Of a DNA stretch of 64,000 nucleotides, positions 4,553-43,080 are shown piece by piece. The stretch lies in the IMG/VR virus record IMGVR_UViG_3300023278_002893, positions 62,001-126,000 of that record; one strand, given 5' to 3'. A program made the translations under genes and the position numbers. The notes below the pieces were generated by a model. That model did no database searches and was not told where the DNA came from. It was given only the letters and a program-made list of their open reading frames with translations. Numbering within the stretch: position 1 is the stretch's first letter; each line of letters opens with the position of its first letter.

Positions 4553-5111
4553 TCTCTACGACCCTACGCACGTTCTTGAATCCTGCTCGCTCCATGCGAG
4601 GCTTAAAAGACTCGAACGTGTACATAGCCTTGTGCGCTCCCCACTCTGTGTACTGCCCTGGGTGGGGGACTTCACCGTCTGGCATACAATCCCTCTCCCA
4701 GTCAGGGTTGCCGGAGATCTTCTCCCAACCATCGGGACCGCCAGGGTAATCGGAAAATCCTCCAAACAACGCGATCATGGTCTCTTCAGTGGAATGAGTC
4801 CCATCTACATAAGCGTGACATAAAAAGTCCAAATCAGGCATCTTGAGCCTAATGATTCCACTTGGTTTCAAAACTCTATACCACTCCCTAAGGACAGCGC
4901 CCACCTCTGTGTAGGAGAAATGTTCAACCGTATGGGCAGAGTAAAGATCATCCACCTCGTTGTCTGATATCCAATCCAGATTACGAACGTCTGACTCCCT
5001 ATCAACATTACCCACCTTTACAGCATCAACGTGGTAATATCCGGGCTCTCCGTGCGGGCCAGACCCCAACTCTATACGAACAGGACTACTTGCTGACGTC
5101 AGGAACTGCAT
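4518..5111 (-). CDS. Methyltransferase type 11-like protein
   Basis: IELGSG, YSAHTVEH, EWYRVLKPSG..PD. Confidence 0.7.
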   Translation of the reverse strand: MQFLTSASSPVRIELGSGPHGEPGYYHVDAVKVGNVDRESDVRNLDWISDNEVDDLYSAHTVEHFSYTEVGAVLREWYRVLKPSGIIRLKMPDLDFLCHAYVDGTHSTEETMIALFGGFSDYPGGPDGWEKISGNPDWERDCMPDGEVPHPGQYTEWGAHKAMYTFESFKPRMERAGFKNVRRVVENDWELHVTGTK

Positions 5112-7068
5112 CTGATACTTTCTTTTTAGTAGTCTGCCTGAATGACAAGCCTTTCTTATCTTTGGACAGACTAACTGTTACCTTCGACCCCGCACCAACG
5201 TCCTCTCCCAAGATCGCCTTGGCAAGGGGGGTGTTAAGGAACTTCTTTACTGCCCTTCGCATCGGGCGAGCGCCGAACTTCTTGTCGATGCCTCGATCTA
5301 AGAGGAAGTTTTTGGCACCCAGATTGAAAGTAAGAACCAACCCTCGGGATTTCTTGACCTGCTCGTTGATCTCGGCGAGGAGAATATCCAGAATGTGCAT
5401 GTAATCTCCACGCTCCAGCAATCGGAAATGAATCACATCATCAACCCGGTTCAAGAACTCCGGTTTGAACTTCTTCTTCAGTGCGGCCGAGCGTGCCTTG
5501 GTAGTCTTGGTCTCGTCCGCCTCGTGCTCCCCACCAAACCCCATAGTCTTGCCTACATTATCTACTTCCTTAACGCCGATGTTCGAGGTCATGATAATGA
5601 AGCACTGCTTGAAGGAAACTTTCTTACCCCCCTTACTCTCCGTAAGAACACCATCATCGAGGATCTGGAGGATGCGCTCGTGAAAATTACCATGTGCCTT
5701 CTCGATCTCGTCAAAGAGAACAACCGAGAAAGGATTCTTAGATACTTCCTTAGTCAGATGACCACCCTCATCATACCCCACATACCCAGGAGGGGAACCA
5801 GTTAGTTTGGCTACCTCATGAGACTGCTGGTATTCCTGACAATCTATCCGCACAAGATGTGCGTCCAGAACCTCAGCGAGAGCCTTCGCAGCCTCGGTCT
5901 TACCTACACCTGTATTACCGGTAAGCAGGAAGCAACCTAGGGGCTCGTGGTCACGTTTAAGTCCCACCGAAGCTCGCTGGATAGCATCTGTCACCATCTC
6001 TATAGCCTCATCCTGACCAACAATGTGCTTCTTCAACTTGTCGGAAAGATTAAGTAGGGTTTCCTTAGGAACATCCTCAAATCTCTTTCTTTTAGAAGAC
6101 GCAGACTGGCTCTCTTCATTCCCCGCCGCTGACATTCTTCTATTGTTCTTAGTCTTAGATCGCTGTCTATCCTTGAAATCTGCACGGATCTTCTTCAGAT
6201 CGACATTCTCCAACTTGAGAAACGGATTATAATCTATAGCGATTTCATACAGCTCCTGTACCAGCTTAGCGGGCTTAGTGTGCTGCGTAACGCCCATAGT
6301 ATCCAACAGATGGAAGATATCAGCAAAGTCTTCGATGCACAGATGTACTATCAGAAGATGATAGCCGCTAATGGTCTCAAATGGCGTACCTCCCAACAGC
6401 AATGATGCGGTATCTTCGTCTGCTTCATACTGACGAATGTTCAATCCCACACCTATCTTCTTCCAACGGTGTCCAATCAGCTCATAGGGCACATCGTCTT
6501 TGCCCCCACCGCCCCCGCCCGGGCTATCCCTGAAGGGGTTATCGGGAGGTGATTCGTCCTGGGGACCATCTAAAGAGCCGATCTCATCATCATCAAAGAA
6601 GGGATTCCTAGGCCCCTCTACCGCATCCGGCGCGCGGGTAATAACCGCAGGGCCGAAGTCGGAAAGCGGAGGGTCCTGATCCCATAGAGAATTACTGGTG
6701 AGGGGACGAGCATCCTCATCCTCCCGCACAGTGGCTTCGATCTTCATTACATTGTTATCATTTATCATGATATTCTCCGGCAAAAACGCCGGACAATACT
6801 TATAGACCAACGACAACGCTTCGGCCCTAATCTCTTCGACCCTCGTATAGAGTTCTTTTCTCCTGCGAAGGTGGTAGAAAAAAGGTGAGGAATTTGCCAT
6901 GCAAGTTCCTAGCACAAAATCCTCATAAAACACCCGATACATGAGTCCCTTATCGGGGGAGAGCAACGATAACTTATCATTTACATCCCCATCAGGGTAT
7001 TCGAGGATCATGACATGGAAATCCGCAGACTCCAAAAATACCTTATGTGTAACATAAGCTTTGGACAT
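5086..7068 (-). CDS. Clp/Hsp100 ATPase with a single (D2-type) AAA+ module and an unrecognised N-terminal half
   Basis: IVGQDEA, Walker A GNTGVGKT, pore loop GSPPGYVG, Walker B VVLFDEIEKA, MTSN, MGF loop, FKPEFLNRVD, sensor-2 GARPMRR; no D1 module. Confidence 0.85.
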   Translation of the reverse strand: MSKAYVTHKVFLESADFHVMILEYPDGDVNDKLSLLSPDKGLMYRVFYEDFVLGTCMANSSPFFYHLRRRKELYTRVEEIRAEALSLVYKYCPAFLPENIMINDNNVMKIEATVREDEDARPLTSNSLWDQDPPLSDFGPAVITRAPDAVEGPRNPFFDDDEIGSLDGPQDESPPDNPFRDSPGGGGGGKDDVPYELIGHRWKKIGVGLNIRQYEADEDTASLLLGGTPFETISGYHLLIVHLCIEDFADIFHLLDTMGVTQHTKPAKLVQELYEIAIDYNPFLKLENVDLKKIRADFKDRQRSKTKNNRRMSAAGNEESQSASSKRKRFEDVPKETLLNLSDKLKKHIVGQDEAIEMVTDAIQRASVGLKRDHEPLGCFLLTGNTGVGKTEAAKALAEVLDAHLVRIDCQEYQQSHEVAKLTGSPPGYVGYDEGGHLTKEVSKNPFSVVLFDEIEKAHGNFHERILQILDDGVLTESKGGKKVSFKQCFIIMTSNIGVKEVDNVGKTMGFGGEHEADETKTTKARSAALKKKFKPEFLNRVDDVIHFRLLERGDYMHILDILLAEINEQVKKSRGLVLTFNLGAKNFLLDRGIDKKFGARPMRRAVKKFLNTPLAKAILGEDVGAGSKVTVSLSKDKKGLSFRQTTKKKVSDAVPDVSK

Positions 7069-7085
7069 TTGATATTTCCCTTTCC

Positions 7086-7967
7086 CTAGAGGTTAGATGC
7101 AGCCCTTATTACTTTGATCGCTTCTGCATGGGTTAACTCTTCAAATACCTGCTTGGGGGCACCTAGATCATCCACAATACCGGGCGCTAGTTGGATCATG
7201 TCCGGTTGATTCTTACCTCTCTTCTCCGCAAGACTCTCCAACGCACCCTTCTGAGTAGAAGTAATACCCTTTTTAGAATTAGGATCCTCAAAAGGATTAG
7301 GACGCTCGCTCGAGGTGCTCGCGGCTACCGCTGCCGGCGGGCGGGGTGGTGGAGCAGGGCGCTGCACGGCTTGCGGTGGGGCTGGAGGAGAGGGCCTCTG
7401 CACGGCAGCGGGGGCAGGGACTGTTGGACGTGGAGGCCCGCCTGCAAACGGCTGTGCGGGCGGATCTGCGGGCGCTGGGGGGCGCGACGGCGGAGTTGGG
7501 CGAGGCGGCGGGGCGAGCGGGAGCGGAGACGGTTTAGACGCAGCGGTCGTCGAGGGGCGACGAGTTGGAGGGGTGAACGGAGCAGGCACGTCGTCCAGAT
7601 AAAGCTCAAGAGCCACACCCAACTGACTTGCACACTTCTTCAACCCATCACTGGCAGCTCCCTTCAGGGCGGCACCTGTATCAACACCTTTGTTAATGTT
7701 GCAGGAACCAAACTGCTGCTTAACTATAGGACTACCCTGCGAGTCCCACACCTTCAACTCAACCAAAGCGACAGCCAGGCCGTCAAAGATTTCGTGCTTA
7801 ATTATCGTAGTATCCCAAGCATAGTCGAATGCTTCGTTTAGAAGCTGAATCGCGTGCTCTGTTCCGATGTAATCGAAGGTCATTCCATGACCACCCTGTC
7901 GTTGCTTAACCCTTGAAGGGTCTAGGGGTCTTTGGATAACCTCTTTTGCCTGATCGCTAATTGACAT
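7086..7967 (-). CDS. Rad52/Rad22 (Sak-like) single-strand annealing protein with Pro-rich linker
   Basis: VKQRQGG..FDYI..AIQLLNEAFDYAW...ALKGAASDGLKKCASQLGVALELY, followed by a Pro/Ala-rich tract and a small C-terminal domain. Confidence 0.8.
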   Translation of the reverse strand: MSISDQAKEVIQRPLDPSRVKQRQGGHGMTFDYIGTEHAIQLLNEAFDYAWDTTIIKHEIFDGLAVALVELKVWDSQGSPIVKQQFGSCNINKGVDTGAALKGAASDGLKKCASQLGVALELYLDDVPAPFTPPTRRPSTTAASKPSPLPLAPPPRPTPPSRPPAPADPPAQPFAGGPPRPTVPAPAAVQRPSPPAPPQAVQRPAPPPRPPAAVAASTSSERPNPFEDPNSKKGITSTQKGALESLAEKRGKNQPDMIQLAPGIVDDLGAPKQVFEELTHAEAIKVIRAASNL

Positions 7968-8272: not shown

Positions 8273-8296
8273 TTGTATCTCCTTAATTACCCACCA

Positions 8297-8325
8297 ATCA
8301 TATGATGGGGGAGGATGTAAGTCAA
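8297..8325 (-). promoter_or_regulatory. Sigma70-type promoter for hyp-rad52-clp ATPase genes
   Basis: TTGACT-17 nt (TACATCCTCCCCCATCA)-TATGAT in an intergenic gap. Confidence 0.65.
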
Positions 8326-8339
8326 GCCCACAACTCCAT

Positions 8340-9086: not shown

Positions 9087-9155
9087 TATAGTACGTCAGC
9101 CTCCTTGGAGGGAGTTATCCCCGCAAAACCTATAGGCAGTGCGGGGTAATGACTA

Positions 9156-9398: not shown

Positions 9399-9400
9399 GT

Positions 9401-9510: not shown

Positions 9511-9515
9511 TGAGT

Positions 9516-10282: not shown

Positions 10283-10294
10283 TTTAATTCTCCT

Positions 10295-10585: not shown

Positions 10586-10590
10586 GATTT

Positions 10591-12049: not shown

Positions 12050-12091
12050 TTTGGATTCCTCCTTTTTGTCCAGATTCCTCTGGAAATAAAT

Positions 12092-12455
12092 GCCCAGAAT
12101 TCTGTTGCCAGGGACTGGGCGACCCCCGCATACGTTATAGTAGTATCAGTACTTTACGCTGCAAATGCAAAAGACTCTACGAGGGTCTCGGTAGAACCGA
12201 ATTCCTTCGCGGCCAAATCTCTTGCGTACTCTACTAGAGAGTTAGTTTTGCCAATTGAAACATTTAGGATTTTTAACGAGGCCATCCTAAATCCTCGGGC
12301 TGCGTTCTCTACTTATTCCGTCCAGTCGATTCCAATTCTCCCCCAGTAATACTATACACACTCTGGTGGAGGAGGGGGGTGTCGAACCCCCGTGCTGATA
12401 CCGTCGTCAGAAGAGACCGAATAACAGCCATCTTGTACCTATACTCTCTTGTACA
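12092..12455 (-). ncRNA. ssrA: Circularly permuted (two-piece) tmRNA
   Basis: Acceptor piece first: ...GGCTGT...CAC-GGGGG-TTCGACA-CCCCC-CTCCTCC-A-CCA, ending at 12364. Then a 19-nt spacer. Coding piece from 12344: GGGGGAG-AATTGGAATCGAC...GCAGCC, pk1 (CGAGG/CCTCG, TTTAGGAT/ATCCTAAA), tag ORF, terminal pseudoknot. Acceptor stem GGGGGAG/CTCCTCC has the G3:U70 alanine identity pair. Outer ends are approximate. Confidence 0.92.
12154..12252 (-). other. tmRNA tag reading frame: (A)GKTNSLVEYARDLAAKEFGSTETLVESFAFAA*
   Basis: Resume codon GGC follows pk1 and TTCAATT; 32 codons then TAA; ends in the hydrophobic-AA degron. Confidence 0.85.
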
Positions 12456-13318: not shown

Positions 13319-13744
13319 CTAAAATCCTTCCCGCTGTCGATTCTTATCCATTGACTTCTTTAGATACTCTATTGAGGTTCGTAATCTTCTTGGGCTATCT
13401 CCAAAAAATCCTAGTCCAGAATTACAATTACCACAAAGCAAGCCTCTGACCTTCCCACTTTTATGGTCGTGGTCTATCACTAACTTCTTAGTGGAATCTA
13501 AACAAATAGCACAACTATCTTCTTGTTCCCAGACCATCCTGTTATAATCATCCTGGGAAAGTCCATACTTATGTAGCCGGGCGCGATTACTTTTACAATC
13601 CTTACATCTATGGTCGAACTCATCGTTCGTGTTCGGATCTCTATCGAAACTACTATGTGGTCGATGTTCGTGACAGCAGTCGCAGTATTTATTCTCGGCA
13701 AGATCTACGTCTGGTAAGCCAAAAAGACGGAACTGGGTGGCCAT
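13319..13744 (-). CDS. Endonuclease VII family (His-Me finger) nuclease
   Basis: KYGLS..DY..M...Q..CAIC...LVIDHDHKSGKVRGLLCGNCNSGLG. Confidence 0.85.
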   Translation of the reverse strand: MATQFRLFGLPDVDLAENKYCDCCHEHRPHSSFDRDPNTNDEFDHRCKDCKSNRARLHKYGLSQDDYNRMVWEQEDSCAICLDSTKKLVIDHDHKSGKVRGLLCGNCNSGLGFFGDSPRRLRTSIEYLKKSMDKNRQREGF

Positions 13745-14980: not shown

Positions 14981-15009
14981 ATGATAAGGGGATGATCCCC
15001 CATTGTCAA
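14981..15009 (-). promoter_or_regulatory. Sigma70-type promoter with palindromic spacer
   Basis: TTGACA-ATGGGGGATCATCCCCT (17 nt)-TATCAT. Confidence 0.7.
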
Positions 15010-15686
15010 GAAGTTCCTGAAATAGCAACAGCTGTGAGCGACACTCCCGCGAAGGGGCCACCACAATCTTCCCGACCTAACGACACCGGGCCTCCAGAAT
15101 CAGTGACCATATATGCTGTACTAAACTTGTGCATGTTAACGGGCGATGCGTCGAGACTAGTAAACAAGGAACCACTGGGCAATAGGTGAGCCGTGTGATT
15201 GCTTGACTGCGCCATACAAAGATCTACAACTAAATATCCAGAAGGAACAACCATCGTAGAGTCTGAAATAAGAAAATCAGGTCGCTGAGTATTTATAACA
15301 GGCCCTACATGAGGAATGAACGACGTACCCGTATCAATACCTGTAAATACAAAACCAGCCGCGTTCATAACCGCGACGGGGTTATCAAATTCCAACCTTA
15401 TTGTACCACTTGTAGCTGCGGGATCCTTCAATGCTATTATGAAACCCGCAGGGAACGGCTCCCCACCTACCCCAATATTGGAAGCCACCAGCTCCATGGG
15501 CTGGGTAGACATCGACGTCATTGTGAAGTTTGCAGAATGAAAATTAGACCTATCACCATCAACCATACCAACAAACGCATACATGATTTCGGTTCCCGAG
15601 ACGGGAATACCTGTCATGTCAATATTTATGTTGCGCTCGTTGAAAATTGAATTTCTAAGCCCAGAAGTGGTAAGCTCGACTATCAT
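15006..15686 (-). CDS. Hypothetical beta-rich protein, possibly virion-associated
   Basis: Ser/Thr/Gly-rich with repeated xSG motifs like the structural proteins at 50-64 kb. Confidence 0.55.
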   Translation of the reverse strand: MIVELTTSGLRNSIFNERNINIDMTGIPVSGTEIMYAFVGMVDGDRSNFHSANFTMTSMSTQPMELVASNIGVGGEPFPAGFIIALKDPAATSGTIRLEFDNPVAVMNAAGFVFTGIDTGTSFIPHVGPVINTQRPDFLISDSTMVVPSGYLVVDLCMAQSSNHTAHLLPSGSLFTSLDASPVNMHKFSTAYMVTDSGGPVSLGREDCGGPFAGVSLTAVAISGTS

Positions 15687-21009: not shown

Positions 21010-21612
21010 TTATCCTCTCGTACTCTTAGTCTGGATTTTATCAACAATTCCAAACTCCATTGCTTCCTCCGCAGACATCCATTTGTCTCTGTCGTAGAGG
21101 GATTTACACTCTTCCACCGTTTTACCCGTGTTCAGTGCTAAATCTTTCATCAAGATCTCATTAACGGTTTCCATCTCACGCATCGTGATCTGGACATCGG
21201 TAATATCGCCCTTCGCTCCGCCAGATACCTGATGCATCATAATACGTGCTCTCGGCATAGAATAACGCTTACCTTTTGTACCTCCCGCCAAAAGAAAACA
21301 CCCCATGCTAGCAGCAGACCCAACACATAAAGTATGAATGTCGGGCTTGATGTATTCCATCGTATCATATATCCCAAGACCTGCGGACACCGACCCACCA
21401 GGTGAGTTGATGTACATAAATATGTCCTTGTTGGGATCGTCATTCTCCAAAAAGAGGAGTTGACCTATGATAAGATTGGCCATCGCATCGCTAACTGGGG
21501 TGCCTAGGACTATAATCCTATCTCTCAATAACCTTGAGTAAATATCGTACGCTTTCTCACTATTGCCATCCTTTTCGATAACAACCGGCATTGGAATTCC
21601 TGCTTCAGACAT
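21010..21612 (-). CDS. clpP: ATP-dependent Clp protease proteolytic subunit
   Basis: YDIYSRLLRDRII, YINSPGG, catalytic AASMG, IMMHQ, DRDKWMSAEEA.EFGIVD. Confidence 0.95.
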   Translation of the reverse strand: MSEAGIPMPVVIEKDGNSEKAYDIYSRLLRDRIIVLGTPVSDAMANLIIGQLLFLENDDPNKDIFMYINSPGGSVSAGLGIYDTMEYIKPDIHTLCVGSAASMGCFLLAGGTKGKRYSMPRARIMMHQVSGGAKGDITDVQITMREMETVNEILMKDLALNTGKTVEECKSLYDRDKWMSAEEAMEFGIVDKIQTKSTRG

Positions 21613-21819: not shown

Positions 21820-21848
21820 ATAATAAGGGGACAATCCCCTGTTGTCAA
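21820..21848 (-). promoter_or_regulatory. Sigma70-type promoter with palindromic spacer (clpP operon)
   Basis: TTGACA-ACAGGGGATTGTCCCCT (17 nt)-TATTAT. Confidence 0.7.
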
Positions 21849-21900
21849 GCACCGTCTAAAGTTTCCTGCTCTGCATTCTTAACTCTATCGAAATCCCTGA

Positions 21901-22068: not shown

Positions 22069-22097
22069 ATCATACACTATACTTCCCCCATTGTCAA
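22069..22097 (-). promoter_or_regulatory. Sigma70-type promoter
   Basis: TTGACA-ATGGGGGAAGTATAGTG (17 nt)-TATGAT. Confidence 0.65.
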
Positions 22098-22105
22098 GGA
22101 ACACC

Positions 22106-22915
22106 TTACTCGTGGTAGGTTTTAATTTCGCCTATGTAGTTGTTCTTCATATGTTCTTTGTGTGCGCGAGTCGCCGCATTTCGTGCCGCTTCCACCTCTT
22201 TCTCTGTGGCATTTTTGAGACGGCCGTCAGCAAGCATATGATGACGCCTACACAAAGGAAGCCAATTAGAACCATCCAAAGGATTATTTTCATGATTGCC
22301 GTCTAAATGATGGCAATCCACACTCTTAACGTTCTTACCTTCGACTTTATCACAACCAGGGAAGAAACATTTGATTGGATCACCGAAGATTTTCTTCAGC
22401 CGAAACTTACCCTTACCAAAGTAGAGGTGTCGGGAGCGTCCGCCCTTCCAAGAATTACTTTTATCTCCAGACTGGGCTTCTGAAATTCTCCTCCGCCGCT
22501 CGTCGGTAACAACGACTTGACTTAATTTAAGTCTCGTGGCGTCACTGACCTCATGTCCTAACAAACTGGCACTGATGGCTAATTTGTGTTCTTCGGAAAG
22601 CTTCGAACCCAATCGAGCCTGTCGAATCTTCTCTTTGGTTTCTTCAGAGTGCTTCTTTCCTGTATTAGCAATGGCAAGCTTGAGGGCTTTGGGTGTCAGA
22701 TACTTCTCTGGCTTCTTGCCTCTCTTCTTTAAGATAAACCTCAAGCGAGACAGCTGCATTCGCCTTCTTGTCAAGGGTGATACAACTGGTGCGTTGGGAA
22801 ACTGCTCCCTGTATTTCTTTGAATTCAGGTCATGTGTTTTTAGATGACCGGGTAATGATTTATATCTGTTGAAACAAATTTCACATTTTACTGTTGGAGT
22901 TAATTTCTGTGCCAA
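22106..22915 (-). CDS. Free-standing HNH homing endonuclease with NUMOD3 repeats and N-terminal Zn finger
   Basis: CEIC...HLKTH; GKKHSEETKEKI-type repeats; CHHLDGNHENN..NWLPLCRRHH. Confidence 0.8.
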   Translation of the reverse strand: MAQKLTPTVKCEICFNRYKSLPGHLKTHDLNSKKYREQFPNAPVVSPLTRRRMQLSRLRFILKKRGKKPEKYLTPKALKLAIANTGKKHSEETKEKIRQARLGSKLSEEHKLAISASLLGHEVSDATRLKLSQVVVTDERRRRISEAQSGDKSNSWKGGRSRHLYFGKGKFRLKKIFGDPIKCFFPGCDKVEGKNVKSVDCHHLDGNHENNPLDGSNWLPLCRRHHMLADGRLKNATEKEVEAARNAATRAHKEHMKNNYIGEIKTYHE

Positions 22916-22954: not shown

Positions 22955-23617
22955 TTATAGCATAATCCTAGCATTATCTATTTCTAAATCACGCACTTCT
23001 GAAACCAGAATAAAGCCAGGAAGTAACTCACCCGTCGTAAGATAATACAGATAGTCTAAAAAATCAAAGGCGGCTTTGGTGGCTACCAAATCATCTCTTC
23101 GAAAGAAACAAACAGCTTGCTTTGACCAACCTTTCTGCCCCGGGGCCAGAAGACAAATAATATCTATGTTAGTATTATTCTCCTTACTATTCAAACTATC
23201 AGCCACCCGTATTTGAACCTTTGCAAGATCTTGTGAAATCAGTAATATAAGAATTGCTGGTAGGTCACTAGAATCTAAGAAATCTGGTAAAGTTCTCAGA
23301 GATAGAAATTTTCCAGTAGCTTCTTCCATCACATTTTGTAACCACCACTCTGTGTAAGAGGTAGTCCGTTTTTTATGTTCTGCCAGTATCCACTGACTCT
23401 CTTTCGTCTCTATTAGAAAATCAGGCCTTTTACCAATATCTGATATATCTTTTGGATCATCTATATACAAATAAACTTTGTCTCCAAACCATTTTTCTGA
23501 CCAGGGTGGGGGGTTTTGTTGTTTCTTCAACTGCCTCTTATGGTTTTCCCTTTTTCTATAACGATCTTCTTTCGACTTTCTCGACAATTTCCGCTTCTTC
23601 TTATTTACCATCATCAC
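22955..23617 (-). CDS. Hypothetical protein (AT-rich, basic N-terminus)
   Basis: ORF track; composition differs from flanks. Confidence 0.55.
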   Translation of the reverse strand: MMMVNKKKRKLSRKSKEDRYRKRENHKRQLKKQQNPPPWSEKWFGDKVYLYIDDPKDISDIGKRPDFLIETKESQWILAEHKKRTTSYTEWWLQNVMEEATGKFLSLRTLPDFLDSSDLPAILILLISQDLAKVQIRVADSLNSKENNTNIDIICLLAPGQKGWSKQAVCFFRRDDLVATKAAFDFLDYLYYLTTGELLPGFILVSEVRDLEIDNARIML

Positions 23618-26600
23618 TCACATCCGCTATGACCGCAATCGGCGCACTTCACACAACCACTCTCCATAATCAATTTCTTAGACTGACAGGAGCGGCATCT
23701 TGAAACCTCTAAATACTCTTCGTCTGTAATATACTTCTTCAGTACCCGCAGGATCGCTTTACTGAACGCAGTTACCTCCCCATCACACTTCGTGAGCTGG
23801 GAAACCAGCGCGTTGAGTGGAGCCCCGTGTCTAAGACTGGTGGATAAGAGACGGGTGACCATTCGATGTTCATCATTCAGAAGGAGCTGAGCTACGTTTT
23901 TGATTGTCCAGGTGTCCTCACCTGTACCAATCACGAGGTTATATCTACCGTGCCCATTCCTCCTCAGCATACCACCTGTGCGGGATGAGGATATTTCGAT
24001 ATGTTCCTCCGGGAAACAGAAAACCTCATAGGGTTTCCCATGGAGAAGACCAACCAAAACCTTCCACTTCTCGCCCTTTACACTAACCGTATGAATGTCA
24101 CAATCCAGATCATCGGGCCGTACAGGGGCATTCATCGTTACCACCGTTTTTGGCCTGGAACCTGGATTCTTGGACGGATTCTTGAGGGTCTCCAAGATCT
24201 GAGTCTTGGAACCGTCCCGATATACGGCGGTGGATTTGATATTACTATCGAAAGCACCTATATAAGCACCCATGATATCGTCTACAGTCGCTTCAGGCGG
24301 GAGATTGATGGTATTATGAGATACTATACCAGATACAAGATAGTTATGTGATTCTTCAACCTCCACATCATACATTGAGATTTTGCCTGAATTCTCTATT
24401 GAAGAAATCTTCATCACCTTGCCCAAAATTTCTAATCCTAATTCTTCTGCCAATTCCCGAGTACAATGTTGGGATCTTCTTTGTCGTAAATTACGGACAG
24501 CAGAATAACGAGGATGGTCCGATTTGATAGGCAGTGTGAACACATCTTCATGCTCGAATGCAACCAGGTGTGCTCTACCGCCATTAACTTTGGGAGAACA
24601 TTTGTGTAACTCTAAAGGTGTGATGGTTTGCATTAGTTCATCAGAAACCATTACGGAATGAACGTAATAGCCGTGAGACTTAACTAGTTTCTTACCACAA
24701 TAAACACGGGGCTTTCCAAAAGAACGAAGCATTTCTGCGACTTGATACGCCAGTGCTTGGGATTTACCTTCGTACACAACCAAACCCCTTCCCGGCCGCA
24801 AATAACCATCTAAAGTAAGTCCTTCGATAAAATGTCTCTTTTCAGCAAAACTTCCTTGTAAAATCTGATCAGGAACTCTCTTATCATCACTCCTATAACC
24901 AATCAATTCTCTAAGATATCTAACTAATACACGAGAGGTAAGTCTGTGCTCAACCACACCCGTCCGCGAATCTATATGAACTTCTGGAATAACGCCAAAT
25001 ACATCTTCAGCGAGTGTGTTGTAGAAATTCCCCACATTCCCTGAATCTTTTTCGTATAAAGAAACCTTACCAGTGGATTCCTCCAAATGACCATCCGCAG
25101 CCAACATTCCTAAAAGTTTAGCTAGATAAACCGACATTTTATCCGGTAAATTTATAAAGTTCGCATTAGTTTTCCTATCAAAATCTATATTTATTGTACG
25201 AGAATTCTCAACATCAAAAACCTCAAAATCGTCGTTGATAAATATCAAATCATCGGGAACTAGATCACCCAATGTTTTCCAACCCCCGATAGTTTTTACT
25301 TTATGAGAATCAGATGCGCCAGTTATGGATGATCCGTTTTGCAGAACAAGACTGGTTGCATCTTTCTCACCGGCACTGTAATGGGAAAGTACTTTACGAT
25401 GAATACCCTTCTCATCTATAACCATCAGATCCTGAAGCGGTTCCCCAAAAACATCAACACCGCGTGCGTTACCGCACTGCTCAATAGGTAAAATTCCTCT
25501 ATTAGTATTGATCAAAGTACCCCCAGCTAAACATTTACTCACACTAGAATCAACCTGCTCAGAAAACACCGCCTGCATCGCCAAGTGGTCTTGCCAGCTG
25601 ATGTCCTGAGCCTGCTCGAAGTACTTTGGCACCCTCTTATGTCGCCTTAGTTCCCGGAAATCGTGGTTGTATTCCGCAAAGTCAATACCGCGAGTCTCCA
25701 TCCATTCTAAAAATGAAGGGCAACCATCCATAATAGTTCCGATATTGGAATTCCGCTGATACGCCATAGCAAAATAAGGCTCGCACCCAGAAGAATAACC
25801 GGTAATAGTTCCAGTTGTTCCCGTAGGAGCTTGCGTAAGGATAGTGACATTCGCAATACCATGGGTCTTTAACTCCTTCTCCAGATCAGGTCTCTCCTTG
25901 AGAAGCTGCTGGATGAACTTACTCTTCTTGAACTTCTTGAAGTCGTAAGCTGGGAATGGACCAATCTCTTTGGCCATATCAATGGACGCTTCGTACGCTG
26001 TGTGCTTGATGAACTTGAGAATCTTCTTAGCCATTCCGCGGCCAGAATCTTGACTATAAATGTAATCCTTATCGGTGCGCATGGACATGCGGATTAACGC
26101 CTCGTGCATACCAATGGTTCCCAAACCTATGCGACGCTCTTTCTGGGTGTTCTCATCAATCTTCTCAACTCCAGTCTCGTTGAGAAGGGTAATCCAGTTA
26201 AGACTACGCACCAAAACAAAGACTGCTTCCCTCAACCCATCCCAATCCACCGAACCGTCCTCATTTACAAACTCAGGAAGGACAAGACTGGACAAGCAAC
26301 ACACTGACCATGGTGGAAGAACCTGCTCTGCACAAGGATTGGTTGCGTCTAACGGATTAAAATATTCCCCATTGTGATAAGCACGTGCCCTATCTACGAA
26401 AAAGATACCAGGGCACCCATCCTCCCATGCATTGGTACAGATACGTCTAAACCACTCATATGCGGTAAGGTGATAGGAACTCTTGACAAGTTTTAGATGC
26501 TTAGTATTCCTAAAAGGAACCTCATTCGTAGCCTCATGTAGTGCTATTTCTTCATCTGGCGCGCACACTGAAATGGGAATAACAGTCTCCACGCCGGGCA

Positions 26601-27387
26601 TTGTGGGATCATACATAGTCAATTCATAATCCCAGAGCGCCCAGGTCTTTTCTTCCCAACTCAACTTCCACGGCTTCTTCGACTGACGCTTAACCTGGCG
26701 CATAAAATTATCTGAAATAGCGACAGAAACATTGAATGTCTGCCATGGATAGGGGTTAGTCCATTGCCACTGCTCGAACATACTCTCATCGGTGATCACT
26801 GCAAACTTGCGAAGATTCTCCCAATTGCCTCGGGACTTCTTCGTAATAAACTTCAGAAGACCGGGGTGGGTATCATTCAGAATACCCATATTAGCGCCGC
26901 TACGATTACCTCCCTGCTGAATATTAGAGGAAGCGTATCCCATAGAAGTAATGAAACCTTCAGGGCCACTTGCGCGCGCATTGGCACCCTTACACCAAGC
27001 GCCTGCCGGGCGCAAGCTGGAGAAGTTGATCCCCGTGCCTCCCCCATGTGCCTGGATATGGAAGTGAATCCGCTGGGCCTCAGAGATCTCCTCCCGGCTG
27101 TCCCCAATACCTAGGACAAAACAATTGAACATGTTCTTGATCCCCGTACCTGCTTGGGCAAGAGGACGTCCTGCGTACATGATCTTCTTCTCTTCGCACA
27201 GGGTCTGCGCGAGGGCTCTTCGGTGGTCCTCATCGTTCTGATAAATATAGTTATTTGTACGATTAAATGTTTCAAAAATATCCTTCTCGACCGGGAGACC
27301 GGAGTCGTCTTTGAGGTAATAACGGGAACCCGCAATAGACTCGTGAGCGGGATTAGTGAAGTAAGTTTTAGCTGTGTACTTACCCAT
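23614..27387 (-). CDS. nrdJ: Class II (B12-dependent) ribonucleotide reductase, intein-containing
   Basis: NCFV, GGGTG.NFS.LRP, TNPCAEQ..CCL, RRIGLG, APTGT, DSSVSK/TIN, C-terminal TSCPD-like domain and CxxC...ESGCVKCADCGHSGC; no beta-subunit gene nearby. Confidence 0.9.
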   Translation of the reverse strand: MGKYTAKTYFTNPAHESIAGSRYYLKDDSGLPVEKDIFETFNRTNNYIYQNDEDHRRALAQTLCEEKKIMYAGRPLAQAGTGIKNMFNCFVLGIGDSREEISEAQRIHFHIQAHGGGTGINFSSLRPAGAWCKGANARASGPEGFITSMGYASSNIQQGGNRSGANMGILNDTHPGLLKFITKKSRGNWENLRKFAVITDESMFEQWQWTNPYPWQTFNVSVAISDNFMRQVKRQSKKPWKLSWEEKTWALWDYELTMYDPTMPGVETVIPISVCAPDEEIALHEATNEVPFRNTKHLKLVKSSYHLTAYEWFRRICTNAWEDGCPGIFFVDRARAYHNGEYFNPLDATNPCAEQVLPPWSVCCLSSLVLPEFVNEDGSVDWDGLREAVFVLVRSLNWITLLNETGVEKIDENTQKERRIGLGTIGMHEALIRMSMRTDKDYIYSQDSGRGMAKKILKFIKHTAYEASIDMAKEIGPFPAYDFKKFKKSKFIQQLLKERPDLEKELKTHGIANVTILTQAPTGTTGTITGYSSGCEPYFAMAYQRNSNIGTIMDGCPSFLEWMETRGIDFAEYNHDFRELRRHKRVPKYFEQAQDISWQDHLAMQAVFSEQVDSSVSKCLAGGTLINTNRGILPIEQCGNARGVDVFGEPLQDLMVIDEKGIHRKVLSHYSAGEKDATSLVLQNGSSITGASDSHKVKTIGGWKTLGDLVPDDLIFINDDFEVFDVENSRTINIDFDRKTNANFINLPDKMSVYLAKLLGMLAADGHLEESTGKVSLYEKDSGNVGNFYNTLAEDVFGVIPEVHIDSRTGVVEHRLTSRVLVRYLRELIGYRSDDKRVPDQILQGSFAEKRHFIEGLTLDGYLRPGRGLVVYEGKSQALAYQVAEMLRSFGKPRVYCGKKLVKSHGYYVHSVMVSDELMQTITPLELHKCSPKVNGGRAHLVAFEHEDVFTLPIKSDHPRYSAVRNLRQRRSQHCTRELAEELGLEILGKVMKISSIENSGKISMYDVEVEESHNYLVSGIVSHNTINLPPEATVDDIMGAYIGAFDSNIKSTAVYRDGSKTQILETLKNPSKNPGSRPKTVVTMNAPVRPDDLDCDIHTVSVKGEKWKVLVGLLHGKPYEVFCFPEEHIEISSSRTGGMLRRNGHGRYNLVIGTGEDTWTIKNVAQLLLNDEHRMVTRLLSTSLRHGAPLNALVSQLTKCDGEVTAFSKAILRVLKKYITDEEYLEVSRCRSCQSKKLIMESGCVKCADCGHSGCE
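24313..25533 (-). mobile_element. Intein with LAGLIDADG homing endonuclease (407 aa) in nrdJ
   Basis: Starts CLAGGTLI after VSK; ends YDVEVEESHNYLVSGIVSHN before Thr+1; LAGLIDADG blocks LLGMLAADG and FIEGLTLDG; AT-richer than the exteins. Confidence 0.92.
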
Positions 27388-35273: not shown

Positions 35274-35275
35274 TT

Positions 35276-40433: not shown

Positions 40434-40440
40434 CTTAAAT

Positions 40441-40650: not shown

Positions 40651-41782
40651 CCACCTTATGCTCCCTCACTTTAAAGACAGGAGCATTATAACTGACCTTG
40701 GCTACCTTAGAGAGCGGATCTTTGAGCTCCGGCCTGTCTTTAACAAAGCGATCCAGTTTGGCTTTATTTACTACCAAAACGTTGAAAAGATCTGCTTCGG
40801 GAATGATATTTATGACATCCTCAAGATCGTAATTAGTTCGTCCTGCTTGAGTACTGTAAAGTTCCCGCTGGGCGGTGGCAATGGTCTCACCTAGAACTGC
40901 CTTCTCGGAAGCCATCATCTTCATCTCACGCTGACGGTTCTCCAGGATACTCTTCTGACCTGCGACATGCTGCCAGTGCTCCAAGAATCCGGCAGGATCC
41001 ATATCGGTAATAGAAGTAAGAACCCTACGACTATCTGCGACAGTGTCGGCATATTCAGGGCAATACACGCTATAATCGCACCACCCACATAGATTATTGA
41101 TCCGACCTTTTTGCTCCGCATCAACGATCTCATTCATGTGCTTCCAAGTACTTACCAAAAACCTACGGAACGTATCCTGCTGGGCGGCTGTCCTGTAGGA
41201 AGACACACTCTTATTGATTCGAGGATACTCCAAGGTAAGAATCCTATTGGAATACTGCGGCCAAACAATACTCGCTGCTAAATCATACATGGAGAGCTGG
41301 ATATCATCCTTCAGCTGCCATGTAGAAAGAGCAGTACGTGAGGTCTTATAATCCACAACCTCAATAGTATCTTCATTGATGATTCTAACCTTATCAATTG
41401 CACCTACAATTGGGATGTCATCGGGAGTATTGATCTTGAAGAAATGCTCAACTTCTAAGACCTGCTCTGCGGGATCCCACCTGTCGATCCACTCAGTAAT
41501 CATGGTCTTCCCGTCTTCATAGAACTCCATGTTAGCCAGACCGATGTCTGTCGCCTTATCCATGAATACGGTGACGGCGAACTCATAATCTGACGGAGCC
41601 GGAAAGCTCTTCTTTTCCATCATACGACGTGTAAATTGCTCAAGTGCCTCATGGACAGCAATACCCACACGTGCATGGTCATTCATTACTCTCGGAATTT
41701 CACGGTCGTATCGGAACACCGTCTTCAATTTACACTGAAGAAAGTCCTTAATTCCCGTGGCAGATAATCCTCTAATATCCAT
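40613..41782 (-). CDS. PD-(D/E)XK nuclease, RecB/AddB/Cas4-like
   Basis: SATGIKDFLQC, GIAVHEALE, GAIDKV..VVDYKTS, QLSMY, LCGWCDY..YCP. Confidence 0.85.
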   Translation of the reverse strand: MDIRGLSATGIKDFLQCKLKTVFRYDREIPRVMNDHARVGIAVHEALEQFTRRMMEKKSFPAPSDYEFAVTVFMDKATDIGLANMEFYEDGKTMITEWIDRWDPAEQVLEVEHFFKINTPDDIPIVGAIDKVRIINEDTIEVVDYKTSRTALSTWQLKDDIQLSMYDLAASIVWPQYSNRILTLEYPRINKSVSSYRTAAQQDTFRRFLVSTWKHMNEIVDAEQKGRINNLCGWCDYSVYCPEYADTVADSRRVLTSITDMDPAGFLEHWQHVAGQKSILENRQREMKMMASEKAVLGETIATAQRELYSTQAGRTNYDLEDVINIIPEADLFNVLVVNKAKLDRFVKDRPELKDPLSKVAKVSYNAPVFKVREHKVDDVSDNENASAA

Positions 41783-41785
41783 CTG

Positions 41786-42301
41786 TTATCTCCTATTTTT
41801 CTTACGCGTCTTCTTTTTGGTGGGTTCCGGCCCGGCCTTGATTAGCCCTCGGTATCCCCACAATAACGCCATTGCGTCTGTGATGTCATTCATCTTGTTG
41901 AATGTCCAATCGTCCAAATCATATTTGGTCTTGAAAAATTCAAAGACCTCTTCCTTCTTGAACTTACCTTCTTGCTCACCACAACAATGCTTCCTAGCAG
42001 TAGTAGCGGTAATTATCTCCACCTGAATACCTTTACTTGTACACAACTCTTGTGCCACACCTGCAAACTTAACTAAAGCCTTGAGGGTGTGGATGCTACC
42101 AAAACCAGGTCGGTAGTACGCGTCCTCCACGACCACAAGGTCTGGTTTGTATTTGTCTAAAATCTCTTCCAACTCGATTCGAAAAACCACCAGCTTGTCA
42201 TTGAATGATAACTTAGGGTTAGGAGCAATTATACCACAGGAGCGTTTAGCTATGAACCATCCAGTACTTTTAGTAGAGACATCCAATCCTAATATTTTCA
42301 T
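41786..42301 (-). CDS. ruvC: RuvC-like Holliday junction resolvase
   Basis: ILGLDVS..STGW, VVVED, DITDAMA. Confidence 0.75.
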   Translation of the reverse strand: MKILGLDVSTKSTGWFIAKRSCGIIAPNPKLSFNDKLVVFRIELEEILDKYKPDLVVVEDAYYRPGFGSIHTLKALVKFAGVAQELCTSKGIQVEIITATTARKHCCGEQEGKFKKEEVFEFFKTKYDLDDWTFNKMNDITDAMALLWGYRGLIKAGPEPTKKKTRKKNRR

Positions 42302-43080
42302 TTGCTAAATAGCTGACGCAGCTTCTCCTTTTCTTCATCTGCGATACCCGACACGTCAGGGTAATTAATTTGAACCACTACCATTACATCTCCCCGAGGG
42401 CCTCCATTGAATCCCGCCCCTCCCTGGCCTGCCAATCGCATAGTATTTCCATGTTTTACTCCGGACGGAACTACCAAATTAAGTATCTTCTGCTCAGGGA
42501 CAACACCCTTTCCATTACAGGGGGTACAGGGAGTCTTTATTGATTGTCCTTGCGCCTCACATTTATCACAGCCCTGCTGGATGAACATACTGCCATGCTG
42601 CTGTTGAATAAACCCACCGCCCTTACACTGATCGCACATCTCAAACTCTGTCCCACCCCTACCAGAACAGGCAGAACACCCAGAAGTTAGATTATAATCC
42701 AATGACATCTCTGCGCCGAACAGCGCGTCAAACACGGTAATCTCCAAAGGAATCTGAATACTCTGACCCTTCATGGGTGGGTTCTTTTGGGGAGGGCCGA
42801 ATGGAGAACGTCCTCCAAAGAACATACCAAAAGGATCACCTGTAGTTCTGAAACCTCCAGAAGAACCATTAGGAGAGCCGGTCATGTCATAAGACTGTCT
42901 CTTCTCAGGATCAGACAGCACCGAGTAGGCTTCGGAGATCTCTTTGAACTTCTCCTCCGCCCCCTCGGCGCTGTTCTTATCGGGGTGCCACTCCTGGGCC
43001 AATGTACGATATGCTTTTTTCAAAGCATCGGGCGCAACGTCCCTGGAAACCCCAAGTGTGTTATAATAATCCTTAACCAT
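42298..43080 (-). CDS. dnaJ: DnaJ chaperone (J domain, Zn finger, truncated C-terminal domain)
   Basis: KDYY, HPD, four CxxCxGxG-like repeats; start refined to MVKDYY at 43080. Confidence 0.9.
   Translation of the reverse strand: MVKDYYNTLGVSRDVAPDALKKAYRTLAQEWHPDKNSAEGAEEKFKEISEAYSVLSDPEKRQSYDMTGSPNGSSGGFRTTGDPFGMFFGGRSPFGPPQKNPPMKGQSIQIPLEITVFDALFGAEMSLDYNLTSGCSACSGRGGTEFEMCDQCKGGGFIQQQHGSMFIQQGCDKCEAQGQSIKTPCTPCNGKGVVPEQKILNLVVPSGVKHGNTMRLAGQGGAGFNGGPRGDVMVVVQINYPDVSGIADEEKEKLRQLFSK

What the first reader, a model, noticed from the sequence alone, without database searches (positions are those of the whole stretch)
5086..43080. Candidate phage-encoded trans-translation and proteolysis system: permuted tmRNA, ClpP, Clp ATPase and DnaJ
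Seen: ssrA (12.1-12.5 kb), clpP (21.0-21.6 kb), an MGF-loop ATPase (5.1-7.1 kb) and dnaJ (42.3-43.1 kb), each in a gene run headed by one of the related CTTGAC promoters. Established: tmRNA tags ending in AA are degraded by ClpXP/ClpAP. Inference: the phage brings its own tag-and-destroy pathway. It could recycle ribosomes stalled on cleaved mRNA (host shut-off, or toxin/anti-phage RNases) and route products to its own protease via the long tag. No smpB is visible here, so the host protein or a gene elsewhere is needed. The genes are dispersed, so the linkage is hypothetical.
Basis: partly seen in the sequence, partly recalled or inferred. Interest (0 to 1): 0.85.

Follow-up and report, generated by a model that had tools for sequence, protein, structure and literature searches.

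The report
Jumbo-phage tmRNA, ClpP, Clp ATPase, DnaJ
A 298-kb uncultured phage carries its own ribosome-rescue RNA, a Clp protease, an unusual Clp-type unfoldase and a DnaJ co-chaperone; each kind of gene is already known in huge phages, but genome comparisons here suggest the rescue RNA and the protease work together.

Summary
All four elements are at the stated places and look functional. They are a two-piece (permuted) tmRNA (12085-12431, minus strand; 32-codon tag ending FAFAA), a ClpP with an intact Ser-His-Asp triad, a 660-aa ATPase and a truncated class-A DnaJ. The ATPase has one ClpA/ClpC D2-type ring, and its MGF tripeptide aligns with the ClpP-docking IGL of E. coli ClpA. No SmpB is in the window.

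The window is part of a 297,725-bp IMG/VR contig, inside a replication and repair module. All six related contigs with enough coverage keep ClpP, permuted tmRNA and ATPase in the same order. That is shared ancestry, so it is weak evidence of a functional link.

Stronger evidence comes from unrelated large-phage contigs. Five show DnaJ-ClpP-tmRNA within 4 kb, with one-piece tmRNAs. One shows tmRNA-ClpP-ClpA-like, one SmpB-ClpP, and three ClpC-like-ClpP, two of them with DnaJ alongside.

Against a dedicated system: most phage ClpP loci have no tmRNA nearby. The ATPase's only deeply conserved neighbour is a Rad52-like gene. One clade tag ends in TA rather than AA.

This is a new variant of known kinds; the ATPase architecture is the newest part.

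The parts
12085..12431 (-). Two-piece (circularly permuted) tmRNA gene. Acceptor piece about 12364-12431, ending in an encoded CCA. Intervening segment 12345-12363. Coding piece from 12344 (GGGGGAG) down to a stem plus T-run at about 12085.
   Evidence: Rfam RF04321 matches at 78.3 bits. The sequence is shown. Across 7 clade sequences, 95.9% of cells are paired against 39-49% in slid controls, and 23 of 38 pairs show compensatory changes; the G3:U70 pair is invariant. The 3' part is conserved in relatives; its end point is inferred.
12154..12252 (-). Tag reading frame: resume codon GGC at 12250-12252, 32 sense codons, stop TAA at 12154-12156. Tag: (A)GKTNSLVEYARDLAAKEFGSTETLVESFAFAA.
   Evidence: The resume position is placed by the Rfam alignment. 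One relative has the canonical Ala codon GCC at this position (L185). The tag is conserved at the amino-acid level across clade members.
21010..21612 (-). ClpP proteolytic subunit, 200 aa.
   Evidence: Pfam CLP_protease 245.8 bits. NCBIfam NF001368 scores 280.6 against a cut-off of 249, while the ClpP-related head-maturation protease model scores 81.6 against a cut-off of 120. It is 51% identical to E. coli ClpP. The S/H/D triad is present.
5086..7068 (-). Single-ring Clp/Hsp100 ATPase, 660 aa. Residues about 330-640 form a ClpA/B/C D2-type module with MGF at 509-511. Residues 1-330 are a family-specific N-terminal region made of two similarly built beta-hairpin-plus-helices domains joined by a disordered Gly/Pro/Asp linker.
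   Evidence: 41% identical to ClpA D2; KTMGF aligns with KSIGL; a hydrophobic-Gly-Phe/Leu/Ile tripeptide (GF in 26) in 28 of 29 family members, with the GYVG pore loop and Walker A and B motifs conserved in most members (irregular in a few; P0123 lacks them); fold match to D2 of ClpC and ClpA in ClpP complexes; no PDB match for the N-terminal region.
7086..7967 (-). Rad52/Rad22-like annealing protein, 17 nt upstream of the ATPase. It is the ATPase's constant neighbour across the whole family.
   Evidence: Pfam Rad52_Rad22, E 2.4e-12. The same adjacency is seen in L002-L004, L102, L185, L186, L187, L188, L273 and L274. In L272 a Rad52-like gene lies upstream with a tRNA between it and the ATPase.
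42298..43080 (-). Truncated class-A DnaJ: J domain with HPD, G/F stretch, four CxxCxGxG motifs and C-terminal domain I. It lacks C-terminal domain II and the dimerisation region. The ORF is open from a TTG at 43110; the ATG at 43080 is the likelier start.
   Evidence: (matches positions 1-257 of the 354-position DnaJ_bact profile).
21820..21849 (-). Sigma-70-like promoter CTTGACA-N17-TATTAT with a GGGGA..TCCCC hairpin in the spacer. It heads a 55-aa ORF and then clpP.
   Evidence: A matching site lies ahead of clpP in L101, L102 and L006.
22069..22098 (-). Second promoter of the same type (CTTGACA-N17-TATGAT), 250 nt further upstream.
14981..15010 (-). Promoter of the same type (CTTGACA-N17-TATCAT). 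It is the nearest such site upstream of ssrA, 2.6 kb away.
8297..8326 (-). Promoter of the same type (CTTGACT-N17-TATGAT), upstream of the Rad52-like gene and the ATPase.
   Evidence: A similar site lies at the equivalent place in L102.
50685..50714 (-). Related promoter-like site (CTTGACA-N17-TATAGT) heading the run from the clamp gene to dnaJ, 7.6 kb upstream of dnaJ.

Best explanation
The window is part of the replication and repair module of a lytic jumbo phage. The phage carries a small protein-quality-control toolkit.

Shown:
- A structurally constrained two-piece tmRNA with alanine identity and a conserved long tag.
- A catalytically intact ClpP.
- An active-looking single-ring D2-type unfoldase with a ClpP-docking tripeptide.
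- A J-domain co-chaperone.

Inferred mechanism: the phage tmRNA is charged by the host AlaRS and delivered by SmpB, either the host's or one encoded outside the window, to ribosomes stalled on broken mRNAs during infection. It releases them and appends a tag of about 33 aa whose C-terminal A-x-A-A resembles the Clp degron of bacterial SsrA tags. Tagged chains are then degraded by Clp proteases that include the phage ClpP, driven by the phage ATPase, the host ClpX or ClpA, or both. DnaJ recruits the host DnaK. It belongs to the same proteostasis toolkit but not specifically to trans-translation.
For: tmRNA function:
- 95.9% of cells are paired and 23 of 38 pairs show compensatory changes.
- G3:U70 is invariant.
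- Tags are conserved as peptides across divergent DNA, and 6 of 7 end in AA.

ClpP is a true ClpP and not a prohead protease.

ATPase:
- MGF aligns with the IGL of ClpA.
- A hydrophobic-Gly-Phe/Leu/Ile tripeptide is kept in 28 of 29 family members down to about 22% identity.
- The best fold matches are D2 rings of ClpC and ClpA in ClpP complexes.

Co-retention: 6 of 6 clade contigs with coverage have ClpP, permuted tmRNA and ATPase in the same order.

Independent clustering elsewhere:
- DnaJ-ClpP-one-piece tmRNA within 4 kb in L142, L148, L151, L155 and L156.
- tmRNA-ClpP-ClpA-like in L190.
- SmpB two genes from ClpP in L237.
- ClpC-like-ClpP-DnaJ in L149 and L163.

The tags next to clpP in those lineages are also long, at 20-25 codons.
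Against: - The four genes are spread over 38 kb among DNA-metabolism genes and are not an operon.
- Clade co-occurrence is shared synteny, so it is not independent evidence.
- In 80 ClpP-anchored phage loci, only 3 have a tmRNA and 1 an SmpB within 10 kb. About 22 instead have ClpX, most of them with ClpS.
- The ATPase is always beside a Rad52-like gene. In the distant contig L273 it has neither ClpP nor tmRNA within 10 kb.
- The ATPase lacks the D1 ring and N-domain of ClpA, and nothing shows that it binds the tag.
- The L102 tag ends in LTA.
- No SmpB is in the window or in any fetched clade locus.
Confidence: 0.45

Rival explanations
1. The four genes are independent auxiliary genes with no shared pathway. 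The tmRNA only keeps ribosomes free, and tagged products go to host proteases. ClpP and its ATPase degrade or remodel specific host or phage proteins. DnaJ helps replication-complex remodelling or virion assembly through the host DnaK. Their co-occurrence reflects a large conserved genome.
For: - The genes are dispersed among replication and repair genes.
- dnaJ sits next to the RuvC-like, PD-(D/E)XK nuclease, SSB, primase and DnaB genes.
- Most phage ClpP loci lack a nearby tmRNA.
- Phages with two-piece tmRNA have been described with no Clp link drawn (PMC9004378).
- Reviews of jumbo phages treat ClpP, ClpA/X/S and DnaJ as separate, patchily distributed functions (PMC7824862 and PMC6102473).
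Against: tmRNA or SmpB lies beside clpP, and dnaJ beside clpP, in several other lineages, with tmRNAs of the other gene form. This is hard to explain without some functional tie. All six clade contigs retain the full set at about 60% protein identity.
Confidence: 0.38
2. The ATPase mainly remodels or turns over the Rad52-like annealing protein or other recombination and replication complexes, with or without ClpP. This would parallel ClpX acting on MuA or lambda O, and ClpA acting on P1 RepA. It would have nothing to do with the tmRNA tag.
For: The Rad52-like gene sits 12-20 nt upstream of the ATPase in nearly every member examined, including members at 28-38% identity (L188, L273, L274). L273 has the pair without ClpP or tmRNA within 10 kb. 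The neighbourhood is made of recombination and repair genes. The ClpX and ClpA precedents are from my own knowledge and PMC6102473.
Against: The conserved ClpP-docking tripeptide argues that the ATPase feeds a protease. Adjacency alone does not identify a substrate. This reading is compatible with the ATPase also handling tagged proteins.
Confidence: 0.12
3. The tmRNA is a non-functional remnant picked up from a host (an attachment-site fragment) or a decoy that blocks host trans-translation, and ClpP is a capsid maturation protease.
For: Prophages often integrate at ssrA and carry fragments of it, and a tag-less phage tmRNA-like RNA that inhibits host tmRNA is reported. ClpP-like prohead proteases are common in phages, and one database record names the Atu_ph07 ClpP a head maturation protease.
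Against: - The gene is complete, with covarying helices and a tag conserved as a peptide in 7 divergent phages.
- The ATPase family occurs in none of about 185,000 bacterial and archaeal species genomes except one mis-binned contig, so this is not a prophage lineage.
- ClpP scores well above the ClpP subfamily cut-off and below the head-maturation cut-off, and it lies in the replication module.
Confidence: 0.05

Closest known systems
Two-piece (circularly permuted) tmRNA of Alphaproteobacteria, some Betaproteobacteria and Cyanobacteria, and the two-piece tmRNAs already reported in marine phages (Melnitz, pelagimyophages)
   Same: The gene order is acceptor piece, intervening segment, coding piece. 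It has the T-arm, the 7-bp acceptor stem with G3:U70, an encoded CCA, the P2 helices, and a tag ending in A-x-A-A. It matches RF04321. A relative (L003) also passes the alpha_tmRNA threshold.
   Different: The tag has 27-38 codons in this clade, whereas about 10 aa is the commonest bacterial length (PMC11915505). The resume codon is Gly, Ala or Asp depending on the member. ARAGORN misses the gene. No glutamine riboswitch of the Melnitz kind was detected by Rfam in the 3' part.
SsrA-tag degradation by ClpXP and ClpAP in bacteria
   Same: A C-terminal hydrophobic-Ala-Ala tag end, an intact ClpP and an unfoldase with a ClpP-docking loop are all encoded by one genome.
   Different: The unfoldase is neither ClpX nor ClpA. 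It is a single D2-type ring with a family-specific N-terminal region. No SspB- or ClpS-like adaptor and no SmpB were found in the window. Tag recognition is untested.
Clp and chaperone genes of jumbo phages (Atu_ph07 and Rak2-like phages with ClpA next to DnaJ, ClpP, ClpX, ClpS; phage G with ClpXP and a tmRNA; Lak and other huge phages with tmRNA and SmpB)
   Same: A large phage carrying its own ClpP, a Clp ATPase, DnaJ and tmRNA. SmpB and ClpP homologues are present in Lak phages and in huge-phage records.
   Different: This lineage has no relative among deposited phage genomes. There was no DNA match, and no ATPase match covers more than 57% of the protein. The papers found do not describe tmRNA-clpP gene clustering. 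The ATPase architecture differs.
Single-ring D2-type Hsp100 proteins (the ClpB/Hsp104 NBD2 module; mitochondrial CLPB/Skd3)
   Same: One AAA+ module of the ClpB-D2 type with a D2-small domain behind a non-AAA N-terminal region.
   Different: Those proteins lack a ClpP-docking loop and act as disaggregases. This family keeps a hydrophobic-Gly-Phe/Leu/Ile tripeptide at the ClpA IGL position. Its N-terminal region has no match in the PDB.

Membership tests
tmRNA, two-piece/permuted form (RF04321) | Covariance-model match above the curated threshold | tested here: met
   78.3 bits against a gathering score of 47. Seven clade members score 56-98 bits.
tmRNA, two-piece/permuted form (RF04321) | tRNA-like domain built from two separated halves: a 3' acceptor strand with T-arm upstream and a 5' acceptor strand downstream, with the G3:U70 alanine identity pair | tested here: met
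   The 7-bp stem GGGGGAG/CUCCUCC is followed by ACCA. The U:G pair is invariant and its neighbouring pairs covary.
tmRNA, two-piece/permuted form (RF04321) | Tag reading frame with a resume codon and an in-frame stop, conserved as a peptide | tested here: met
   The frame has 32 codons plus TAA. Homologous tags occur in 6 other contigs.
tmRNA, two-piece/permuted form (RF04321) | Processing into two RNA pieces, aminoacylation, and dependence on SmpB | not testable with these tools
   No SmpB is in the window or in the clade loci. The other 234 kb of the contig could not be read.
ClpP (peptidase S14) | Family-model match above threshold, scoring better than the phage prohead-protease relatives | tested here: met
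   Pfam 245.8 bits. NF001368 scores 280.6 (cut-off 249), while head-maturation NF045542 scores 81.6 (cut-off 120). The score is below the TIGR00493 equivalog cut-off (270.4 against 308.6).
ClpP (peptidase S14) | Ser-His-Asp catalytic triad | tested here: met
   S, H and D are present at the columns of E. coli S111, H136 and D185.
ClpA/ClpC (class I Hsp100, ClpP-associated) | Two AAA+ modules (D1 and D2) and a Clp_N domain | tested here: not met
   Only one AAA_2 module, at residues 376-544. There is no Clp_N, AAA_lid_9 or D1 match. All NCBIfam equivalog scores are far below their cut-offs.
ClpA/ClpC (class I Hsp100, ClpP-associated) | ClpP-docking hydrophobic-Gly-Phe/Leu tripeptide between sensor-1 and the arginine finger of D2 | tested here: met
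   MGF 509-511 aligns with ClpA IGL. A hydrophobic-Gly-Phe/Leu/Ile tripeptide (GF in 26) is present in 28 of 29 family members. Physical docking was not tested.
ClpA/ClpC (class I Hsp100, ClpP-associated) | Catalytic and translocation motifs of D2: Walker A, Walker B, GYVG pore loop, sensor-1, Arg finger and sensor-2 | tested here: met
   GNTGVGKT, VVLFDE, PPGYVG, TSN, FLNR and GARP are all present, and are invariant or nearly so in the clade.
ClpX | ClpX-type AAA+ module with an N-terminal zinc-binding domain | tested here: not met
   ClpX models score 23-30 bits against cut-offs of about 360.
DnaJ, class A (type I Hsp40) | J domain with HPD, G/F region and four CxxCxGxG zinc-finger motifs | tested here: met
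DnaJ, class A (type I Hsp40) | Full C-terminal client-binding domains I and II and the dimerisation region | tested here: not met
   The match covers profile positions 1-257 of 354 in TIGR02349, at 237.5 bits against a cut-off of 377. The protein has about 260 aa, against about 375 in bacterial DnaJ (the latter figure is from my own knowledge).
Complete trans-translation system (tmRNA plus SmpB) | An SmpB gene in the same genome | tested here: inconclusive
   SmpB is absent from the 64-kb window and from all clade loci fetched.

The most novel reading that the evidence does not exclude
The unusually long, lineage-specific tag is a private degron. Its conserved inner part (NSLVEYA ... ETL) would be read by the family-specific N-terminal domains of the phage's single-ring unfoldase. 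The phage would then run a tagging-and-degradation channel separate from the host's ClpXP/SspB route, for example to clear truncated proteins made after host mRNA shut-off or after attack by anti-phage RNases. The recurrent tmRNA-clpP gene clusters with long tags in other huge phages would be versions of the same strategy.
Probability: 0.12. Interest if true: 0.85.

Novelty: new variant of a known kind. Interest (0 to 1): 0.55.

Why it matters
Phage tmRNAs, phage ClpP and Clp ATPases, and phage DnaJ have each been catalogued, but their purpose during infection is unknown and they are usually discussed separately. The recurrent placement of tmRNA or SmpB genes beside clpP in several large-phage lineages, always with long tags, gives a concrete and testable hypothesis: huge phages bring their own ribosome-rescue-plus-degradation route.

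The ATPase family is a separate point of interest. It is a ClpP-docking unfoldase with a single D2-type ring and an N-terminal region that has no structural relative. It is always paired with a Rad52-like gene. It could reveal a new way of giving a Clp protease its specificity, or a link between proteolysis and phage recombination.

Tried and rejected
- ARAGORN on the window found no tmRNA. The Rfam and covariation evidence overrides this.
- Megablast of 20 kb of the window against deposited phages gave no match.
- Exact-product look-ups for two window proteins found nothing on record, so the rest of the contig could not be walked that way.
- A viral-contig scan with an SmpB alignment was swamped by E. 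coli-type SmpB at prophage ends. It says nothing about this contig.
- A fold search of the whole ATPase model matched only the D2 ring. The N-terminal model had no PDB match with E below 1.
- An internal duplication of the N-terminal region is suggested by the repeated secondary-structure pattern, but it is not significant by sequence (E 0.53).
- The conserved 3' part of the tmRNA gene was checked for a riboswitch of the kind reported in phage Melnitz. Rfam found only tmRNA models there.
- Host inference through bacterial genomes returned only a 16-kb contig binned as 'Candidatus Altiarchaeales', which is almost certainly mis-binned phage DNA.
- P0074, a 475-aa bacterial D2-only ATPase, lies in an ordinary chromosomal context and is not part of this family.
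- The bare hexamer CTTGAC is not enriched. Only the extended promoter motif is.

Full report
WHAT THE WINDOW IS. The window is bases 62,001-126,000 of IMG/VR contig IMGVR_UViG_3300023278_002893, which is 297,725 bp long. Essentially all genes are on the minus strand. The identifiable ones form a DNA replication, repair and nucleotide module:
- ribonucleotide reductase large subunit, carrying an intein
- family-A DNA polymerase
- DnaB-like helicase, primase and sliding clamp
- RecA and SSB
- RuvC-like and PD-(D/E)XK nucleases
- RNase HII and Fpg glycosylase
- DNA methylases and an exonuclease
- endonuclease VII
- PhoH
- a Rad52-like protein
- glycosyltransferases
No deposited phage genome resembles the window at DNA level.

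THE OBSERVATION. All four named elements are present at the stated places.

The tmRNA matches Rfam's tmRNA_permuted over its full length at 12154-12429 (-), scoring 78.3 bits against a threshold of 47. ARAGORN missed it. Read directly, the gene runs in this order:
- an acceptor piece (about 12431-12364) with a GGGGG/CCCCC T-arm, the 3' acceptor strand CUCCUCC and an encoded ACCA
- a 19-nt intervening segment
- a coding piece starting with GGGGGAG at 12344

The two strands form a 7-bp acceptor stem whose third pair is G:U, the alanine identity element. The tag frame starts at GGC (12252-12250), has 32 sense codons and ends at TAA.

ClpP (21010-21612) is 51% identical to E. coli ClpP and has the catalytic Ser, His and Asp. 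It passes NCBI's ClpP subfamily cut-off and falls below the cut-off for ClpP-related head-maturation proteases.

The ATPase (5086-7068) has a single AAA+ module of the ClpA/B/C D2 type in residues about 330-640. It carries Walker A and B, the GYVG pore loop, sensor-1, the arginine finger and sensor-2. Its KTMGF aligns exactly with KSIGL of E. coli ClpA, the ClpP-docking loop.

DnaJ (42298-43080) has HPD, a G/F stretch and four zinc-finger motifs but lacks the last third of bacterial DnaJ.

The promoter claim holds only in an extended form. CTTGAC alone is at chance frequency. CTTGAC[AT]-N16-17-TAKNWT occurs four times, all on the coding strand, against 0.2 expected, and a fifth variant lies at 50714. 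The site ahead of clpP is conserved in three relatives.

No SmpB is encoded in the window.

IS THE tmRNA FUNCTIONAL? Seven distinct sequences of this tmRNA were collected from related contigs: the window, L003, L099, L101, L102, L185 and L186.
- On their alignment, 95.9% of base-pair cells are standard pairs, against 39-49% when partners are slid by 1-3 columns.
- 23 of 38 pairs show compensatory double changes.
- The G3:U70 pair never varies, while the acceptor pairs next to it covary.

The tags are homologous as peptides although the DNA has diverged:
- GKTNSLVEYAEALAIKELRSTETIIEATAIAA
- AKTNSLAEYAENLGKAEGFHGIGRESTETLDAMTAFAA
- GNSLVEYATRLHAKELVSKDVEQVAIAA
- GTSLMEYATRLHAEELVSEDVEQVAIAA
- DNSSLMSYAKALHVRELSEKETLVEAEAIAA
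- QTLTDYVAAMHKGELAIKETLAPAKTLTA

Six of the seven (the window's plus these six) end in A-x-A-A; one ends in L-T-A. One member has the canonical Ala resume codon at the position inferred here. This is a working gene under selection on both structure and tag, not a remnant of an attachment site.

The tags are two to three times the usual bacterial length, which is most often about 10 aa (PMC11915505). From my own knowledge, they keep an Asn/Ser-rich start and a hydrophobic-Ala-Ala end like alphaproteobacterial tags, with extra residues between.

THE ATPase FAMILY. A database search found about 70 full-length relatives at 53-82% identity. All come from metagenomes, many on contigs of 100-320 kb. 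The hit list then drops sharply to bacterial ClpC proteins that match the D2 half only.

A profile of the N-terminal 330 residues, run against 1.84 billion representatives, finds 86 clusters. Nearly all are proteins of 600-680 aa, intein-bearing longer versions, or fragments. The region therefore belongs to this family alone.

No deposited phage has the family. Neither does any of about 185,000 bacterial and archaeal species genomes, apart from one 16-kb contig binned as an archaeon.

AlphaFold models give two similarly built domains, each a beta-hairpin followed by helices, at residues 1-125 and 192-305. A disordered Gly/Pro/Asp linker joins them. There is no PDB match. The apparent duplication is not significant by sequence.

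A hydrophobic-Gly-Phe/Leu/Ile tripeptide (GF in 26) is kept in 28 of 29 members down to about 22% identity. This is the best argument that the family feeds a ClpP.

In nearly every member examined, including those at 28-38% identity, the gene immediately upstream is Rad52-like. In L272 a tRNA gene lies between them. One distant contig (L273) has this pair with neither ClpP nor tmRNA within 10 kb.

CO-OCCURRENCE. Within the clade, six of six contigs with enough coverage carry, in order, RNR..., ClpP..., permuted tmRNA..., PhoH, Rad52-like, ATPase. These are the window, 3300009788_002224, 3300037264_004923, 3300022719_000329, an ENA 320-kb contig and an NCBI 194-kb contig. The ATPase of 3300022719_000329 is inferred from P0029, whose longest contig has the same length, 295,848 bp; it was not seen in a fetched locus. 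DnaJ was found on three of these contigs (the window, 3300037264_004923 and 3300005253_000948), on a second contig of the window's own sample, and on a 10-kb contig from the sample of 3300022719_000329. Because the whole region is syntenic, this shows retention but not functional linkage.

More informative are unrelated contigs found through DnaJ or ClpP.
- In a second lineage (ClpP 59-81% identical within the group, about 37-47% to this clade), five contigs show DnaJ, a few small genes, ClpP and then a one-piece tmRNA, all within about 4 kb. These are L142, L148, L151, L155 and L156. The four tags ARAGORN called have 20-25 codons.
- L190 has a one-piece tmRNA next to a ClpP-ClpA/C-like pair, with the tag GKNTHIFNHYPMVEVSQNQYAIAA.
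- L237 has SmpB two genes upstream of ClpP.
- L149 and L163 have ClpC-like-ClpP-x-DnaJ, and L241 has ClpA-like-ClpP.
- L224 and L233 have permuted tmRNAs and tRNA arrays about 9 kb from ClpP.

On the other side, 76 of 80 ClpP-anchored loci have no tmRNA or SmpB within 10 kb, and about 22 have ClpX, most of them with ClpS, instead. The association is recurrent but facultative. These counts are not corrected for relatedness of the contigs.

WHAT IS KNOWN.
- Two-piece tmRNAs are already reported in phages: 53 of 133 distinct phage tmRNAs, mostly from marine phages. That paper speculated that a phage might tag proteins for degradation (PMC9004378).
- Huge phages with tmRNA and SmpB are reported (PMC7162821).
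- Jumbo phages with ClpP, ClpA, ClpX, ClpS and DnaJ are reported, including ClpA next to DnaJ in Atu_ph07 (PMC7824862 and PMC6102473).
- Phage G has ClpXP and a tmRNA (PMC12484599).
- My searches found no paper describing tmRNA-clpP gene clustering or this ATPase architecture. The library is incomplete, so this is not proof of absence.

INTERPRETATION. The identity of each part is secure. The most likely working model is the one set out under best explanation. The phage tmRNA uses the host charging and delivery factors, with SmpB coming from the host or from elsewhere in the genome. It rescues ribosomes during infection and adds a long A-x-A-A-ended tag, and tagged chains are cleared by Clp proteases that include the phage ClpP. 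DnaJ is part of the same proteostasis toolkit.

Whether the phage ATPase reads the tag is open. Its constant pairing with a Rad52-like gene suggests that it has, or also has, a role in recombination-protein remodelling or turnover.

I put about 0.45 on the coupled tag-and-degrade reading and about 0.38 on independent functions. The remainder goes to the Rad52-centred reading and to minor rivals.

Noticed in passing
window 7086-7967 with 5086-7068; L185, L186, L187, L188, L273, L274: The Clp-type ATPase is immediately downstream (12-20 nt) of a Rad52/Rad22-like gene in nearly every family member examined, down to about 28% identity. This gene pair is more deeply conserved than any link to ClpP or tmRNA.
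   Followed up: partly
window 23614-27387 (-): The ribonucleotide reductase large subunit has 1257 aa against 852 aa in a close relative (L271). It carries an intein with a LAGLIDADG endonuclease at about residues 665-1025. Some ATPase homologues (P0040, P0053, P0058) also carry inteins.
   Followed up: partly
window 50736-63938 (-): Five consecutive ORFs (666, 1056, 325, 1200 and 1124 aa) have no Pfam match, and the four large ones tested have no PHROG match. GC and AT skew change at about 50 kb, where this block begins.
   Followed up: no
window 5086-7068, residues 1-330: The N-terminal region of the ATPase models as two similarly built domains, each a beta-hairpin plus helices, joined by a disordered Gly/Pro/Asp linker. 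It has no structural match in the PDB and no relatives outside this ATPase family.
   Followed up: yes
L142, L148, L155, L156, L190 (tmRNA genes beside clpP): Phage tmRNAs next to clpP in other lineages also encode long tags (20-25 codons), ending LAVA, VAYA, LALV or AIAA. Long tags may be a general trait of large-phage tmRNAs.
   Followed up: partly
L102 14050-14330: One clade member's tag ends in ...AKTLTA rather than A-x-A-A, so the canonical Clp degron end is not universal in the clade.
   Followed up: no
L237 8169-10588: A 236-kb viral contig has an SmpB gene two genes upstream of clpP on the same strand. No tmRNA was found within the 20-kb locus.
   Followed up: partly
L192, L198, L205, L214, L217 and about 17 further ClpP loci: Many phage contigs have a ClpX gene near ClpP. 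In most of these it lies about 4-5 kb upstream with a ClpS gene about 3 kb upstream, a different Clp gene set from the one in this window.
   Followed up: no
window 21820-21849 and 14981-15010: Two of the sigma-70-like promoters carry a GGGGA-N3-4-TCCCC hairpin in the spacer between the -35 and -10 hexamers. Similar G/C-rich spacers occur in relatives' promoters. This may be a regulatory site.
   Followed up: partly
L103 (IMGVR_UViG_3300023278_003531, 196,567 bp): A second contig from the same sample ends with a DnaJ gene 100% identical to the window's. It may be an alternative assembly or a close strain of the same phage.
   Followed up: no
L269 (WJJK01000092.1): A 16-kb contig deposited as a 'Candidatus Altiarchaeales' MAG is syntenic with window 2.6-10.3 kb (PhoH, Rad52-like, ATPase, methyltransferase). 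It is almost certainly phage DNA that was mis-binned.
   Followed up: partly
window 13319-13744 and 22106-22915: An endonuclease VII gene and a NUMOD3-containing gene, possibly a homing-type endonuclease, sit within the clpP-ssrA region. In L155 a GIY-YIG gene is inserted between clpP and the tmRNA.
   Followed up: no
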